IMG/VR virus record: IMGVR_UViG_3300029993_000005 | Span: 166,111 to 230,110 of that record | DNA: 64,000 nt | Direction: 5' to 3' (one strand) | Shown: positions 12,425 through 36,693 of the stretch, piece by piece | Numbering within the stretch: the first letter of the stretch is position 1 | How the letters are laid out: each line of letters opens with the position of its first letter | Notes under the pieces: generated by a model | The model's database searches: none | What the model was told of the DNA's origin: nothing | Seen by the model: only the letters and a program-made list of their open reading frames with translations | Program-made: the position numbers and the translations under genes

Positions 12425-12799
12425 ATGACTTCCTATATCCGGCTGTACTTGGTTCCCACACAACCGACAGCTACTCAGCAAGTGATAGACGTAGATTCAA
12501 CCCTATTGGTCTTGTCCCAAGGTCAGTTTTTACCTGTTCAAAGTGCACCTACTTTGACTCTAGTAGGGACACCTACCAGTTCTAGTTTTGATCCGTTCAC
12601 CAGTGCGCAACTAGCTTTAACAATTAGTACGGAGCAGACTCAAGAAATAAAAGTATGTTGGCGAGAACCTGTAGGCACCGATCAGTTTCCTAATGAAGAT
12701 GTGATCACAGAAGTTGACCCGAGTGGTGGAACCTGTGTTTGCGGCATAACCTGCAACGGCACTGACTTGGCCTATGTTATGGTCCAAAACGTAGCCTAA
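12425..12799 (+). CDS. Hypothetical beta-rich protein, possibly a virion component
   Basis: ORF preceded by an AATTTTAT motif; Thr/Val-rich. Confidence 0.65.
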   Translation: MTSYIRLYLVPTQPTATQQVIDVDSTLLVLSQGQFLPVQSAPTLTLVGTPTSSSFDPFTSAQLALTISTEQTQEIKVCWREPVGTDQFPNEDVITEVDPSGGTCVCGITCNGTDLAYVMVQNVA

Positions 12800-33810: not shown

Positions 33811-33849
33811 GAAAAAGGGCACGGCGGTTCGAATCACCGGCGTGCCCTT
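33811..33849 (-). terminator. Intrinsic terminator
   Basis: 14-bp stem AAGGGCACGCCGGU/ACCGCCGUGCCCUU with one mismatch, followed by a U-tract. Confidence 0.85.
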
Positions 33850-33877
33850 CTTTGTTGAAACTTTTGACTATGGATTA

Positions 33878-34297
33878 TTACTTTTTCTTGGTAGGAATCA
33901 ATTCAGCCAAGGCTTTAGCAAACAGAGCTTTAGCCAATGCCTCTTTATCATCCGTCTTATCCTCGTCCTCAACAGCCTCGTCTTCTACTTCTTCAGGCTC
34001 GCCTTCGGGTTCGGCTTCAGCCTCAACCTCTTTACCCTCTTCGTCTTGGTCACCAACCAGATGATCCAGAGCTTTTTCTTCAGCCGCTTTTACCTTAACT
34101 TTCTTGGCATTAGCCGTAGCCTCTACCTTGGCTGTGTAGGCCTGAGCATTATTATGCTCAAGAATAGCGATAGCCGACTGCACGTCCGGTTGGCTAAGAG
34201 CTTTAGCAAAAAGAGCTGCTGCCGTTTTAGGCTTGCCCTTTGATGCTTGCTCCATGGCCAATACCACGTAGTCCAAGGACTTGTTGTAAGTCTTCAT
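33878..34297 (-). CDS. Acidic head-module protein
   Basis: Glu/Asp-rich; internal repeat ALFAKAL x2; last gene of the capsid transcript. Confidence 0.7.
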   Translation of the reverse strand: MKTYNKSLDYVVLAMEQASKGKPKTAAALFAKALSQPDVQSAIAILEHNNAQAYTAKVEATANAKKVKVKAAEEKALDHLVGDQDEEGKEVEAEAEPEGEPEEVEDEAVEDEDKTDDKEALAKALFAKALAELIPTKKK

Positions 34298-34348
34298 GAT
34301 TCATTCCTTTTGAATTCGGTAATTGTAAGGTTCGACGTATTTTGAGCA

Positions 34349-35377
34349 CTAAATCAACAACTTTAAATTGAGCAAGCGTGTAATCTCATTTTTAGTCCAG
34401 AACTTTTCAGTGGGGTAAAACATCCCATCGATATGAACATAAGTCTTGTACTCGGCAAAATGCAGACTTGCAGCTTCCGCTTTAGCACGGTTCTCTATCA
34501 GAGCTTCTTCTTTGGGCATCCAGTGATAATCTCTTAACCCTAGAGACGACAAATCTTTAATCTCTATATAAGTATCTCCAACCTTAAAATCTGGAGAATA
34601 CTTAGCCATTCTATTTAGTCTTGGATTAAAATAATCTACTGATTCCTTGGGTTCATATACTATGTCGTCAACGGGAGTAGCCCTGTGTTTAACTAAATGC
34701 TCAACAAAGGCTTTCTCGATCAACGACCTAGTATTGAAATCCTTACCATTAATTCTGAACTTAAACCATATGTGATTTGGGTGGCAGATAGGACATATTC
34801 CAATAGTTTTTAGCTTGAAGAGAGTTTCAGGTTGATGACTTACCTTATGCCCACATTTAATATATTGATGCAAGATCGGAGTCTTCGTACCTTTATACTT
34901 CTCTATGACACGTATGTTATTACTACGTTCTGTCACTTCAGCTACATAAACATCATTCGGTTTCTTAACCCAAGGTCTACACTTGGAGCACGGATCTATG
35001 CACATATTGAAACAAGACAATCGCATGTCGAACACAAAACCGCAGTTATGCTTGTAGGTGAAAACAGTGCTATCTTTACTGCCTTCACCTTCTGTAATTT
35101 TTATGCATTTGTAGTCACCTTTACCTGCACTTTTTAGATGTTCGGTATAAGTTTTAGGCGTTCTCTTAACTTTGTAGAACTGCCGTTTATGAGTACATCT
35201 ACATGCGTGTCCCATCTTACTGTGCTTGCATTCAACAATCCGCAACTCATTACAAGCATTACATTTAACCTCAAACTTGCGGTCACCCAAGACCCTGAGC
35301 AACTTATAGTTAAACGTTACTGAATACTTGTGAGCATAGTCCTCAGGACTAAGTGGTTTAGGTCCAGTCTTTGCCAT
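34349..35377 (-). mobile_element. Putative free-standing homing endonuclease (Zn-ribbon repeats plus PD-(D/E)xK domain)
   Basis: Several CxxC and H.CG..F units; YSPDFKVGDTYIEIK; inserted after the capsid gene; ATG 35377 preferred over TTG 35389. Confidence 0.7.
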
Positions 35378-35535
35378 TATTCTGTCCAATAATATTTAAT
35401 TTGATGAGGTAGATTAGTCCGGACAGGAACCAATCAGGGCCGCTAAACCTTTTCCCTCAAACTCGTTCAAGCTTCTGATAGAGAACCGCGCTAAACACGG
35501 AGTCTTAAGGCTTATTGTTGATTAAACGTTGGTGC

Positions 35536-36627
35536 CTACACACGTAAACCTTTCGCGACGGATCTGCTGTTGGCGATAGACACGGCCAAACTTTCATACA
35601 TCACCCATCCGCGACCCGGAATACGCTCAATAGAAATGTCGATAGGTTGCGATTGCAGGCCACCACGATCCGAGTAAGCACCGTGATTCAATGCATCGGC
35701 AATGACGAAGAACTCACCTTGGTTCAACACCTTATGTTCCGGATGACGATAAGCGTCCGAAGTAATCGTGCAACCATACATCACACCCAGTTCACCGGTC
35801 AGCAACAACTCGTGACGTGCAACCGGATCAATGGCGGCAAAGAAATCCGAATTACCGATGATGTCCTGATAGATATCGGTAGCGATCAGGACATGCGGTG
35901 CTTTCAGGCCCCAGCGCGTAACGTTCGTCATTACTTGAGCGAACGTGTAGGGCGTAAGCTGACCTGAGATAATCGACAGCGGATTATCAATACCTACGAT
36001 CTGATTCACCTGGTTGTACCACAAGCGATCTTCACCCACCATGATTGCTTCGGTTGCTTCAACATACTTCTCTTGCAGAACGTCGCCAGCTGATTGGTTC
36101 AACTCGTTCATCGGAATAAACGGACGAGTAACGACTTGCATTTCCGGCGGTGTAAACCATTTATCGCGAGTGATCTGCGACTGAATCTTGGTGGGGCTAG
36201 TCGAGTACACAGCCGTTACGTTTTTAGTACGCAAGGGGAACCGTGGGATAGCGCCTTGCTCGACGGTAATCTTCGTCAAGTACTTGCGCATAAAACCCTG
36301 ACGATTTGCCGTGATATACAAAGAATCGCTAATCTTTTCACCCAAGACACGATGGGCTTCTTTGTCGTTGAACGCTGCTTGCACTAGTTCGCGACTAAGC
36401 TTGACTTGTTGCTCTGCGCTAGCAAATACACCATCAGCAGCCAAGGAACCATTCGAGGATGCAGCCAAGAACTTTTGTTGGCGGTTAATAAGGTCACGTT
36501 TATCCGATGCATTAATTTCACCGTTACGACCAATTGCACGCTCACCTTCTTGCATGCCGTCGAAACGATACTCGGATGCTGCCACCATTGGCGTCTTCGA
36601 CGCCCGAACCTGAACTTTTGTACGCAT
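35536..36627 (-). CDS. Major capsid protein
   Basis: 363 aa in protease-scaffold-decoration-MCP order; GGAG RBS; AIMVGEDRL, GELGVMYG patterns. Confidence 0.85.
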   Translation of the reverse strand: MRTKVQVRASKTPMVAASEYRFDGMQEGERAIGRNGEINASDKRDLINRQQKFLAASSNGSLAADGVFASAEQQVKLSRELVQAAFNDKEAHRVLGEKISDSLYITANRQGFMRKYLTKITVEQGAIPRFPLRTKNVTAVYSTSPTKIQSQITRDKWFTPPEMQVVTRPFIPMNELNQSAGDVLQEKYVEATEAIMVGEDRLWYNQVNQIVGIDNPLSIISGQLTPYTFAQVMTNVTRWGLKAPHVLIATDIYQDIIGNSDFFAAIDPVARHELLLTGELGVMYGCTITSDAYRHPEHKVLNQGEFFVIADALNHGAYSDRGGLQSQPIDISIERIPGRGWVMYESLAVSIANSRSVAKGLRV

Positions 36628-36653
36628 CTTAATACTCCGTTATTTTGTTTAAG

Positions 36654-36693
36654 TTAGGACCACTAATTAAATGATTAACCTTAGTGATCCTAA
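36654..36693. promoter_or_regulatory. Inverted repeat overlapping a promoter-like motif upstream of MCP
   Basis: TTAGGA-C-CACTAA [TTAAATGATTAACC] TTAGTG-A-TCCTAA. Confidence 0.5.

What the first reader, a model, noticed from the sequence alone, without database searches (positions are those of the whole stretch)
34345..35535. Endonuclease gene behind the major capsid gene is enclosed by nested long-range mRNA helices
Seen: non-coding 35469-35501 is an inverted copy of coding 34476-34506. The core TTTAGC(G/A)CGGTTCTCTATCAGA matches at 21 of 22 positions. The one difference gives a G.U wobble on the sense (-) strand but an A.C mismatch on the other strand, which points to RNA pairing. A second, outer helix pairs 35515-35523 (AAUCAACAA, just after the MCP stop) with 34352-34360 (UUGUUGAUU, the last codons before the nuclease stop), extending a few pairs past one mismatch. 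The two helices nest correctly and would loop out ~1 kb, bringing the MCP stop next to the 33878-34297 gene. A weak CUGUCC/GGACAG hairpin (35421-35426 with 35382-35387) may also cover the nuclease RBS, with an AAUUAAAUA motif in its loop, as in T4 homing endonuclease control. Inference: an RNA strategy that hides a toxic nuclease inside the highly expressed capsid transcript, by fold-back translational silencing, RNase III-type excision or an unrecognised splicing-like event.
Basis: partly seen in the sequence, partly recalled or inferred. Interest (0 to 1): 0.7.

Follow-up and report, generated by a model that had tools for sequence, protein, structure and literature searches.

The report
Self-antisense RNA clamp on phage nuclease gene
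A mobile nuclease gene wedged behind the capsid gene of an uncultured jumbo phage carries, just upstream of a conserved structured leader, a 22-base antisense copy of its own coding sequence, and this kilobase-spanning RNA pairing co-varies in all 14 related cassettes found, so it is a real and apparently undescribed way of keeping a selfish gene quiet inside a highly expressed operon.

Summary
The main observation is real. Window 35474-35495 is the reverse complement of coding 34481-34502, matching 21 of 22 positions, with 0 such matches in shuffles.

The gene is a 342-aa PD-(D/E)XK-fold nuclease. It lies in a low-GC 1.2 kb insertion between the major capsid gene and the next late gene of a phiRSL1/BcepSauron-like jumbo phage from peat.

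I found 13 further homologous cassettes (35-50% protein identity) at the same site. All 14 have the same pairing of 21-38 contiguous bp. The 5' arm lies 76-96 nt before the AUG. The 3' arm is the codons of (A)LIENRAK. The 5' arm tracks codon changes, including non-synonymous ones. The cassette is scattered on the capsid tree, so it is mobile.

It is a loop-loop pairing in a conserved leader with three helices and a start-codon hairpin. This leader occurs in 21 of 21 cases examined, including in front of Endonuclease VII/HNH-type genes in unrelated phages, and has no Rfam match.

The outer helix is not conserved and is within chance.

Best reading: an RNA lock that silences the nuclease ORF in read-through capsid transcripts, probably by making an RNase III-size duplex. 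No RNA data exist, so cleavage, splicing and promoter position remain untested.

The parts
35536..36627 (-). Major capsid protein gene (363 aa), the upstream gene of the operon
   Evidence: phrog_2522 major head protein, E 1e-97. 82% identical to the BcepSauron major head protein.
35486..35500 (-). Local alternative hairpin. Upstream letters CCGUGU pair with GCGCGG, the first part of the 5' arm.
   Evidence: RNAfold of the segment. Called terminator-like. The equivalent hairpin in other cassettes co-varies with the arm (L020 GGGAAU/AUUCCC, L029 CUGCUUC/GGAGCAG). dG is -4 to -19 kcal/mol, against -37 to -56 for the long-range duplex.
35474..35495 (-). 5' arm of the long-range helix (UUUAGCGCGGUUCUCUAUCAGA), non-coding, 96 nt before the nuclease AUG
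   Evidence: Present at the homologous place in 14 of 14 cassettes.
35404..35459 (-). Conserved leader core. P1: 35455-35458 with 35406-35409. P1a: 35446-35449 with 35438-35441. P2: 35427-35435 with 35412-35420. P2 hexaloop CUGUCC: 35421-35426.
   Evidence: RNAalifold on 21 leaders: 15 pairs, 12 with compensatory changes. Covariance model R1 scores 74.9 bits here. No Rfam match.
35375..35394 (-). Start-codon hairpin UAUUAUU[GGACAG]AAUAAUG. Its loop (35382-35387) is complementary to the P2 loop. The AUG (35375-35377) lies in the 3' strand.
   Evidence: a 6-8 bp stem enclosing the AUG in 12 of the 14 cassettes of this family, co-varying (L020 and L030 form a similar hairpin that ends a few nt before the AUG); loop-loop complementarity in 21 of 21, 0 of 100000 permutations as good.
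34349..35377 (-). Nuclease gene, 342 aa. N-terminal Cys-rich modules plus a C-terminal PD-(D/E)XK domain (D263, E272, K274 invariant).
   Evidence: Homologues P0002-P0010 and alignment A1. AlphaFold model, mean pLDDT 82. Residues ~200-340 match TnsA at Z 7.5, Vsr at 6.2, Hjc, and I-Bth0305I at 5.3. The top PDB profile hit is T7 endonuclease I, E 0.05. GC is 0.36-0.40 against ~0.49 in the flanks.
34481..34502 (-). 3' arm of the long-range helix (UCUGAUAGAGAACCGUGCUAAA), codons 292-299 (ALIENRAK), 129 nt before the stop codon
   Evidence: This is the most conserved peptide of the family. It has the second-highest synonymous-codon identity in the gene, 0.65 against a mean of 0.43.
35515..35523 (-). 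5' side of the claimed outer helix (AAUCAACAA). Not supported as a conserved element.
34352..34360 (-). 3' side of the claimed outer helix (UUGUUGAUU, the last codons of the nuclease). Not supported as a conserved element.
33878..34297 (-). Downstream late gene (139 aa, acidic). In cassette-free relatives it follows the MCP gene after 23-97 nt.
33812..33852 (-). Strong terminator-like hairpin that ends the MCP-cassette-139 aa unit
   Evidence: (I4: 17-nt arms, 88% complementary).

Best explanation
The 1.2 kb segment is a mobile, free-standing homing-type nuclease cassette. It sits in the middle of the late capsid operon, between the MCP gene and a small acidic protein gene.

Its RNA carries two locks.

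Lock 1 is a leader that it shares with endonuclease genes of other families in other phages. The leader is a three-helix core (P1, P1a, P2). The P2 hexaloop pairs with the loop of a hairpin that contains the start codon, which buries the ribosome-binding region and the AUG.

Lock 2 is specific to this capsid-site family. The 21-38 nt immediately upstream of the leader are an exact antisense copy of codons ~291-299 of the cassette's own ORF. Any transcript that enters from the capsid gene can therefore fold back over ~1 kb into a -37 to -56 kcal/mol duplex that closes the ORF into a loop.

I infer that this duplex forms in the abundant read-through capsid mRNA once lock 1 keeps ribosomes off the ORF. 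I also infer that it silences the nuclease there. The most likely route is that it acts as a substrate of two or more helical turns for host RNase III. Cleavage would cut the ORF about 45 codons before its stop, and would separate the capsid mRNA from the downstream gene's mRNA. Transcripts started from the cassette's own promoter, just before the leader, would lack the 5' arm and escape lock 2.

Shown here:
- the pairings, their conservation and their co-variation;
- the mobility of the cassette;
- the nuclease fold.

Inferred, not shown:
- that the pairing acts as RNA in cis;
- that it represses expression;
- that RNase III is involved;
- where the promoter lies.
For: Chance is excluded for the repeat in this window.

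The pairing is conserved and co-varies:
- In all 14 cassettes the top-scoring UTR-by-CDS complementarity is the same pair of sites, 21-38 contiguous bp.
- The 5' arm follows codon changes, including amino-acid changes: L009 LIVNRAKC, L020 LAGNRD, L029 FIENCSK.
- Each cassette's own CDS arm is the best or tied-best partner of its own UTR arm in 13 of 14. No permutation out of 100000 does as well.
- Sliding the register by 1-3 nt drops pairing from 0.93 to about 0.4.
- Many columns carry two or three Watson-Crick pair types.

Other support for an RNA-level helix:
- Synonymous sites are unusually conserved at the 3' arm.
- The helix is in the minimum-energy and centroid folds of the 1281-nt RNA.
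- The helix ends differ between lineages while its length never falls below 21 bp.
- A local hairpin that competes for the first half of the 5' arm co-varies with it.
- The adjacent leader is clearly a sense-strand RNA structure. It has compensatory changes in P1, P1a and P2, invariant U.G pairs in P1a, and loop-loop pairing in 21 of 21.

Context:
- The cassette is an insertion. All four named relatives and most of the metagenomic relatives examined go from the MCP stop, through a short hairpin, straight to the next gene.
- Nine cassette-bearing rows need nine gains or losses on the MCP tree.
- The same leader in front of Endonuclease_7/HNH-type genes elsewhere sits behind terminators and -10-like boxes, and has no long-range arm. 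This fits the idea that the arm replaces a terminator where transcription must continue to a downstream gene.

Precedents from the literature:
- RBS-sequestering structures that silence read-through transcripts of T4 I-TevI and Aeh1 mobE (PMC3014915, read).
- 5'-3' pairing of icaR mRNA that blocks initiation and creates an RNase III site (PMC3868564).
- Isoform-specific long-range repression in B. subtilis (PMC8208050).
Against: - No transcript data: no RNA run was listed, and the DNA contigs were uninformative.
- The strand-specific signature is weak in the helix core, 6 G.U against 4 A.C. The arms alone therefore do not prove a sense-strand RNA.
- The duplex does not touch the RBS, unlike the known fold-back systems.
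- Translating ribosomes would melt the duplex.
- No sigma-70-like promoter was found between the 5' arm and the AUG, and this phage's TAGTAAATA motif is absent there. The 'own promoter downstream of the arm' step rests only on analogy with the other contexts.
- RNase III involvement is pure inference from the length of the duplex.
Confidence: 0.6

Rival explanations
1. Translation-sensing switch. The duplex is not a dead-end lock but a sensor. Ribosomes passing codons 291-299 free the 5' arm, which refolds into the local hairpin just after the MCP stop. This would change the leader or the fate of the capsid mRNA 3' region, giving feedback between nuclease translation and its own initiation or the stability of neighbouring mRNA.
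For: The 3' arm lies inside the ORF in 14 of 14 cassettes rather than in the free 3' UTR. There is a co-varying alternative hairpin for the 5' arm. Long-range coupling of this kind is established for RNA phages (MS2 and Qbeta; my own knowledge, and PMC2978339 as listed).
Against: No complementarity links the free 5' arm to the leader, the RBS or P1. A structural route from 'arm free' to 'initiation changed' is therefore not visible. The local hairpin is much weaker than the duplex.
Confidence: 0.15
2. Antisense action in trans. Most capsid transcripts end or are processed soon after the 5' arm, so the very abundant MCP mRNA 3' tail acts as an antisense RNA. It would pair with nuclease mRNAs from any promoter and shut the nuclease off late in infection.
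For: This uses the same complementarity and co-variation as the cis model. The local hairpin with a U-rich tail right after the MCP stop is called terminator-like. Cassette-free relatives all have a hairpin at this place.
Against: The downstream 139-aa gene has no recognisable promoter of its own and is followed by the only strong terminator, so read-through seems to be needed. Cis pairing is kinetically favoured. Nothing distinguishes cis from trans in the sequence data.
Confidence: 0.12
3. DNA-level element. The two arms would be inverted binding sites for the nuclease or another protein (transposon-like ends, or an operator), or would be kept alike by gene conversion.
For: Co-variation of two copies is also what paired protein sites or concerted evolution would give. 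The core G.U/A.C count is nearly balanced. The catalytic domain's best structural match is TnsA, a transposase subunit.
Against: - The 3' arm is 129 nt inside the ORF, not at the edge of the insertion.
- Arm length and ends vary from 21 to 38 bp by lineage.
- The conserved end columns are stable G.U pairs rather than identities.
- The arm changes together with amino-acid replacements in an otherwise invariant peptide (L029, L020). A binding-site model would need simultaneous changes in recognition.
- Recombination between 22-bp inverted copies would invert the gene.
- The neighbouring elements are unambiguously RNA structures.
Confidence: 0.05
4. RNA excision or splicing-like removal. The helix would bring together the ends of an intron-like or ribozyme-processed segment, and the flanks would be rejoined.
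For: The helix encloses about 1 kb, as in rRNA processing stalks. The leader core has about 20 almost invariant nucleotides, as catalytic or ligand-binding RNAs do.
Against: No Rfam group I, group II or ribozyme model matches. The segment lies between genes, so no ligation is needed. The 3' arm lies inside the ORF, so excision at the helix would leave 129 nt of nuclease coding sequence behind. No RNA data are available.
Confidence: 0.04

Closest known systems
RBS-sequestering hairpins of phage homing endonuclease genes (T4 I-TevI, I-TevII/III, segB; Aeromonas phage Aeh1 mobE)
   Same: A phage homing-type nuclease gene embedded among highly transcribed genes. Its Shine-Dalgarno region and/or AUG sits in an RNA helix, so read-through transcripts are not translated (PMC3014915). 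Here the start-codon hairpin and the P2-loop pairing do that job.
   Different: The known cases are single local hairpins. Here the leader is a three-helix core with a loop-loop contact, shared by at least three or four nuclease families. There is also a 21-38 bp pairing with the gene's own codons about 1 kb away. A promoter inside the structure, the T4 hallmark, was not found.
icaR mRNA of Staphylococcus aureus (5'UTR-3'UTR pairing)
   Same: Intramolecular long-distance pairing within one bacterial mRNA that represses its own gene and creates a double-stranded RNase III substrate (PMC3868564).
   Different: The icaR pairing is short, covers the SD and uses the 3' UTR. Here the pairing is 21-38 bp, leaves the SD alone and uses coding sequence. 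RNase III cleavage is not shown here.
Fold-back inhibition of IS10/IS50 transposase in read-through transcripts (my own knowledge: Davis, Simons and Kleckner 1985)
   Same: A mobile element protects itself and its host from activation by outside promoters. Sequence that only read-through transcripts contain pairs with the element's own mRNA.
   Different: In IS10 the pairing covers the start region over a short distance. Here it targets codons 291-299 at a distance of 1 kb. That the 5' arm is absent from the element's own transcript is inferred, not shown.
rRNA processing stalks and phage T7 / lambda sib RNase III sites (my own knowledge)
   Same: Long perfect helices, including ones formed by sequences more than 1 kb apart (16S and 23S stalks), which are cut on both strands by RNase III and define or destabilise RNA segments.
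   Different: Those helices flank the functional RNA. Here one strand lies inside an ORF, so cleavage would destroy the message.
Isoform-specific long-range repression (sigma-A versus sigma-B transcripts in B. subtilis)
   Same: A longer transcript isoform contains an upstream segment that folds onto downstream RNA and represses translation. A shorter isoform from an internal promoter escapes (PMC8208050).
   Different: Those structures occlude the initiation region. The internal promoter is demonstrated there and only hypothesised here.

Membership tests
Free-standing homing endonuclease cassette | Nuclease gene present or absent at one fixed site among otherwise collinear relatives, with patchy distribution | tested here: met
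   The cassette occupies the same MCP-downstream site in 14 cassettes. It is absent in four named relatives and most of the metagenomic relatives examined. On the MCP tree, 9 cassette-bearing rows need 9 changes. The insertion has low GC.
Free-standing homing endonuclease cassette | The enzyme cleaves the cassette-free allele near the insertion site and is copied in by repair | not testable with these tools
   Needs enzyme assays or co-infection. A search for target-site immunity changes in the downstream gene was negative.
PD-(D/E)XK nuclease superfamily | Restriction-endonuclease-like fold with a D...(D/E)xK catalytic motif | tested here: met
   D263, E272 and K274 are invariant. Residues ~200-340 match TnsA, Vsr, Hjc, I-Bth0305I and I-Ssp6803I at Z 3.9-7.5. 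T7 endonuclease I is the top PDB profile hit, E 0.05. The Z values are moderate, and Pfam gave no hit.
T4-type translational hairpin of homing endonuclease genes | SD and/or AUG base-paired in a conserved structure | tested here: met
   The AUG is in the 3' strand of a co-varying hairpin in 12 of the 14 cassettes; in L020 and L030 the hairpin ends a few nt upstream of it. The loop is paired to the P2 loop in all 14 cassettes and 21 of 21 leaders.
T4-type translational hairpin of homing endonuclease genes | A promoter inside the structure gives a shorter, translatable transcript | tested here: inconclusive
   There is no sigma-70-like site and no TAGTAAATA motif in the leader. AAUUAAAUA matches that motif at 7 of 9 positions but is not conserved.
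Fold-back inhibition (IS10 type) / icaR-type 5'-3' pairing | The long-distance pairing covers the ribosome-binding site | tested here: not met
   The long-range helix pairs with codons 291-299, not the RBS. The RBS is covered by a separate local structure.
Fold-back inhibition (IS10 type) | The upstream partner is present only in read-through transcripts | not testable with these tools
   Needs transcription-start mapping. There is analogy only: in other contexts the leader starts right after a -10-like box.
RNase III substrate | About 20 bp or more of near-perfect duplex RNA | tested here: met
   21-38 contiguous pairs in 14 of 14 cassettes, dG -37 to -56 kcal/mol.
RNase III substrate | Cleavage by RNase III in vivo or in vitro | not testable with these tools
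   No RNA run was listed.
Any described RNA family (Rfam 15), including group I/II introns and small ribozymes | Covariance-model match | tested here: not met
   Nothing overlaps the leader or the arms at E up to 10 in the window. Nothing near gathering score overlaps the leader in L087, where all hits cover the upstream terminator.
Transposon with terminal inverted repeats | Inverted repeats at the two ends of the inserted DNA | tested here: not met
   The 3' arm lies 129 nt inside the ORF and about 180 nt from the downstream edge. The 5' arm lies about 40 nt from the MCP stop.

The most novel reading that the evidence does not exclude
The 55-nt leader core has an almost invariant stretch, GGAAAAGGYUUAGCGGCYCU, between co-varying helices. 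Its P2 loop is always complementary to the region just before the AUG. The most novel reading is that this is a new class of factor- or ligand-responsive riboregulator, or a small ribozyme, that phage homing endonuclease genes of several unrelated enzyme families have captured. In the capsid-site family it would be combined with an RNase III-dependent 'RNA excision without ligation' that functionally removes the selfish gene from the capsid operon mRNA, an intron substitute for an intergenic insertion.
Probability: 0.2. Interest if true: 0.9.

Novelty: new variant of a known kind. Interest (0 to 1): 0.72.

Why it matters
Homing endonuclease genes are the commonest selfish elements of large phages. 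How they avoid harming the operons they land in is understood for only a few T4-type cases, all of them local hairpins.

This finding gives two new things, both resting on co-variation rather than on a single fold prediction:
- A kilobase-range self-antisense clamp between a 5' UTR and the gene's own codons, kept through divergence down to 35% protein identity.
- A compact leader shared by nuclease genes of different folds in unrelated phages, which no RNA family database lists.

Both can be tested directly with reporters and compensatory mutations. If the clamp works through RNase III, it would show a way for a mobile gene to sit inside an operon without a terminator and without an intron. 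It would also be a useful natural design for isoform-specific silencing in synthetic operons. The overlap of an RNA helix with the most conserved peptide is a clear example of dual coding constraint.

Tried and rejected
- Outer helix as a conserved feature: rejected. Duplex-fold z-scores are insignificant in 12 of 14 cassettes. In targeted helix scoring only L016 exceeds its null windows.
- G.U versus A.C as proof of sense-strand RNA: weak once two conserved end columns are set aside.
- Named phage databases: no DNA match and no protein match to the nuclease.
- RNA-seq: no run listed. DNA contigs of four peat runs showed no empty-site junction and no variation in the cassette.
- Near-isogenic pair with and without the cassette (L049 against L047): only 89% DNA identity in the MCP gene, so the exact insertion boundaries could not be read.
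- Target-site immunity in the downstream gene (YNRALD codons): the variants also occur in cassette-free phages.
- P1a loop UUAGCGG as a second partner of the 3' arm: it stays constant where the arm changes, so it does not pair with it.
- GGCACCAAC at the MCP stop as a regulatory motif: coincidence. Elsewhere it is the spacer of early promoters, or coding repeats.
- Similarity of the 5' arm to the BcepSauron post-MCP hairpin (CGGGTTCT against GCGGTTCT): other relatives have unrelated hairpins.
- Leader in bacterial genomes: 3 exact 20-mer hits that lack the structure.
- Leader in five related complete phage records: none found.
- Whole-model Foldseek search of the PDB: no significant match. The fold was found only by the wide structural search.
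- I did not run the count of structure pairs on the 1812-column cassette alignment, to avoid sending a very long typed string. The same counts and controls were computed by script.
Full report
**What is there**

On the - strand the window reads as follows:
- the major capsid gene (35536-36627);
- 158 nt of non-coding sequence;
- a 342-aa ORF (34349-35377);
- 51 nt of spacer;
- a 139-aa acidic protein gene (33878-34297);
- a strong terminator-like hairpin (33812-33852).

The capsid assignment rests on phrog_2522 (E 1e-97) and on 82% identity to the major head protein of Burkholderia phage BcepSauron. The window belongs to a 230-kb viral record from peat metagenomes, of the phiRSL1/BcepSauron jumbo-phage group.

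**The observation**

The inverted repeat is exactly as described. Arms 34481-34502 and 35474-35495 match at 21 of 22 positions and lie 971 nt apart. No other copy exists in 64 kb even allowing three mismatches, and none appears in 100 shuffles.

The outer 9-bp helix and the CUGUCC/GGACAG pair are also in the sequence. RNAfold of the 1281-nt RNA puts both the main and the outer helix in the minimum-energy and centroid structures.

**The gene is a mobile nuclease**

- BcepSauron, phiRSL1, BCSR5 and Motura go from the capsid stop, through a short GC hairpin, to the small downstream gene within about 60 nt.
- The segment here is low in GC, 0.36-0.40 against about 0.49 in the flanks.
- The protein has full-length homologues of 35-50% identity, all metagenomic. 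D263, E272 and K274 are invariant in a PDF...ExK motif.
- An AlphaFold model (mean pLDDT 82) matches restriction-endonuclease-fold proteins over residues ~200-340: TnsA at Z 7.5, Vsr at 6.2, Hjc, and the homing endonucleases I-Bth0305I and I-Ssp6803I.
- The top PDB profile hit is T7 endonuclease I.
- Every homologue whose contig could be read lies at the same place, behind a capsid gene and in front of the small gene.
- Among 49 capsid loci from viral contigs the cassette is present in a minority. It is absent from the closest relatives of this phage, which have 91-93% capsid identity.
- On a capsid tree, nine cassette-bearing rows each have a cassette-free neighbour and need nine gains or losses.

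This is the distribution expected of a homing element.

**The long-range helix is conserved and co-varies**

For each of 14 cassettes I scored all ungapped complementarities between the upstream region and the ORF.
- In 14 of 14 the top hit is the same pair of sites. One is a stretch 76-96 nt before the AUG. The other is the codons of (E)(A)L(I)(E)NRAK, about 118-136 nt before the stop. The hit has 21-38 contiguous pairs.
- The next-best hits in each locus are at background level.
- The upstream arm follows the codons, including amino-acid replacements. Examples are LIVNRAKC in L009 (30 bp), LAGNRD in L020, and FIENCSK in L029, where GGAGCAG faces CUGCUCC.
- In a fixed 24-nt frame each UTR arm pairs best, or equal best, with its own ORF in 13 of 14. 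No permutation out of 100000 reaches the observed sum. Sliding the register by 1-3 nt lowers pairing from 0.93 to about 0.4.
- The 3' arm window has the second-highest synonymous-codon identity in the gene, 0.65 against a mean of 0.43.
- Duplex energies are -37 to -56 kcal/mol.

Over all cassettes it does not hold strongly. There are 27 G.U against 8 A.C in a 27-nt frame, but in the core the count is 6 against 4, and the excess comes from two conserved end columns.

**A competing local hairpin**

In most cassettes the letters just upstream pair with the first half of the 5' arm. Examples are AGAACCG/CGGUUCU, GGGAAU/AUUCCC in L020 and CUGCUUC/GGAGCAG in L029. This leaves the second half of the arm free. 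In this window the hairpin is 35486-35500, which the scanner calls terminator-like. It sits where cassette-free phages have their post-capsid hairpin, and it is far weaker than the long-range duplex.

**The outer helix is not supported**

Against 27 same-size windows of the same ORF, the score of the window's outer helix only equals the best null value. Only L016 has a helix clearly above its null, and L011 is marginal. Duplex-fold z-scores are insignificant in 12 of 14.

**The leader**

Between the 5' arm and the AUG all cassettes share four elements:
- a closing helix P1 (GAGG/CCUC, co-varying to GAAG/CUUC, GGCAG/CUGCC and GAGC/GCUC);
- a small hairpin P1a (GGYU[UAGC]GGCY);
- a hairpin P2 with many compensatory changes;
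- a hairpin whose 3' strand holds the AUG in 12 of the 14, and ends a few nt upstream of it in L020 and L030.

The P2 hexaloop is complementary to the loop of the start hairpin in every case. There are seven different sequence pairs among the 14. In L015 the two loops have swapped sides (UGACAG and CUGUCA), so the pairing matters rather than a Shine-Dalgarno sequence.

**The leader is widespread**

An exact search for its 20-nt core in viral contigs found 23 stretches, 13 of them in quite different phages. There the same P1-P1a-P2 core, with a P2 loop complementary to the stretch just before the AUG, precedes small endonuclease genes:
- Endonuclease_7 (PF02945) in L083, L095 and L101;
- phrog_1035/26577 endonuclease VII/HNH-like in L086, L087 and L104;
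- phrog_314 homing endonuclease in L098;
- a divergent second copy before another endonuclease in L102.

On 21 leaders, 12 of 15 core pairs show compensatory changes. The loop pairing is 5-7 Watson-Crick pairs in 21 of 21, with 17 distinct loops and 0 of 100000 permutations as good.

Rfam 15 has nothing matching the leader. The model R1 finds one copy in this window and none in five related complete phage records. Three exact hits in bacterial genomes lack the structure.

In these other contexts the leader follows a terminator and a -10-like box, and there is no long-range arm.

**How it most likely works**

The comparative data show two RNA structures under selection. The leader buries the start region. 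The arm pairs with the ORF.

The arm occurs only in the family that sits inside an operon, where a terminator would cut off the downstream late gene. The other families, behind terminators, lack it. I therefore read the arm as a substitute for a terminator. Transcription from the capsid promoter may pass through, but the read-through RNA, which alone should contain the arm, folds back on the ORF.

The never-broken minimum of 21 contiguous pairs suggests recognition by length, as by RNase III. Placing the 3' arm inside the ORF rather than in the free 3' UTR means that cleavage, or a stable clamp, would inactivate the message.

None of this is shown. There are no RNA data, no promoter was identified, and cis action, trans action and ribosome-sensing variants cannot be separated from sequence alone.

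A DNA-level role is unlikely for four reasons: the arm lies inside the ORF, its ends vary by lineage, the end columns are stable wobble pairs, and the neighbouring elements are RNA structures.

**Comparison with what is known**

The logic resembles several known systems:
- T4 I-TevI and Aeh1 mobE, where RBS hairpins silence read-through transcripts (PMC3014915);
- IS10 fold-back inhibition (my own knowledge);
- icaR 5'-3' pairing with RNase III (PMC3868564);
- isoform-specific long-range repression in B. subtilis (PMC8208050).

It differs in three ways. The pairing targets the gene's own conserved codons about 1 kb away and not the RBS. The pairing is two to three helical turns long. It is combined with a multi-helix leader shared across nuclease families. 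I file it as a new variant of a known kind, with the leader as a candidate new RNA motif.

**Verdict**

The main observation is confirmed and greatly strengthened. The outer helix is not.

Noticed in passing
L083:4815-4896, L086:643-728(-), L087:4482-4564(-), L095:8311-8392, L098:7042-7127, L101:3598-3677(-), L104:11598-11681, L102:5407-5459(-): The same about 55-nt leader core, plus a P2-loop complement just before the AUG, precedes Endonuclease_7, HNH-like and 'homing endonuclease' genes in unrelated viral contigs. It usually sits behind a terminator and a -10-like TTATTTAAT box. It looks like an uncatalogued RNA motif associated with endonuclease genes.
   Followed up: partly
whole genome G000; e.g. 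window 7503, 13662, 16154, 18280, 29910 (+) and 28031, 46182, 56468, 60597 (-): The motif TAGTAAAT, mostly in its full form TAGTAAATA, occurs 36 times, mostly 20-120 nt upstream of genes on the gene's strand. Its 8-mers occur in 18-21 upstream regions where about 1 is expected. It is probably this phage's middle or late promoter element, reminiscent of the T4 late TATAAATA. There is none in front of the capsid gene or the cassette.
   Followed up: partly
genome G000 positions 12738, 54310, 57545 (- strand; outside the window): Three near-identical sigma-70-like promoters, TTGACGTTGGCACCAACCTAAACTATACT. They explain the intergenic enrichment of GGCACCAAC. The copy of GGCACCAAC at the capsid stop (window 35528-35536) seems coincidental.
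   Followed up: partly
L031:1117-2514: One homologue has its N-terminal Cys-rich module in three tandem copies (466 aa), which lengthens the enclosed loop to 1335 nt. The long-range helix is still kept at 26 bp.
   Followed up: partly
L013:2522-2875 and L015:2549-2897: Two cassettes have an extra roughly 320 nt between the capsid stop and the 5' arm. This stretch has no convincing ORF and no sense-strand terminator. Its origin is unknown.
   Followed up: partly
L037, L039, L043, L044, L047, L050, L051, L079, L080 (30-70 nt after each capsid stop): Every cassette-free relative has a strong 8-14 bp hairpin of unrelated sequence right after the capsid stop codon, without a U tract. It may be a conserved mRNA-stabilising or processing hairpin of the capsid message.
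   Followed up: no
window 36640-36690 (- strand, upstream of the capsid AUG): A hairpin, GGAUCACUAA...UUAGUGGUCC, lies in the capsid gene's own leader.
   Followed up: no
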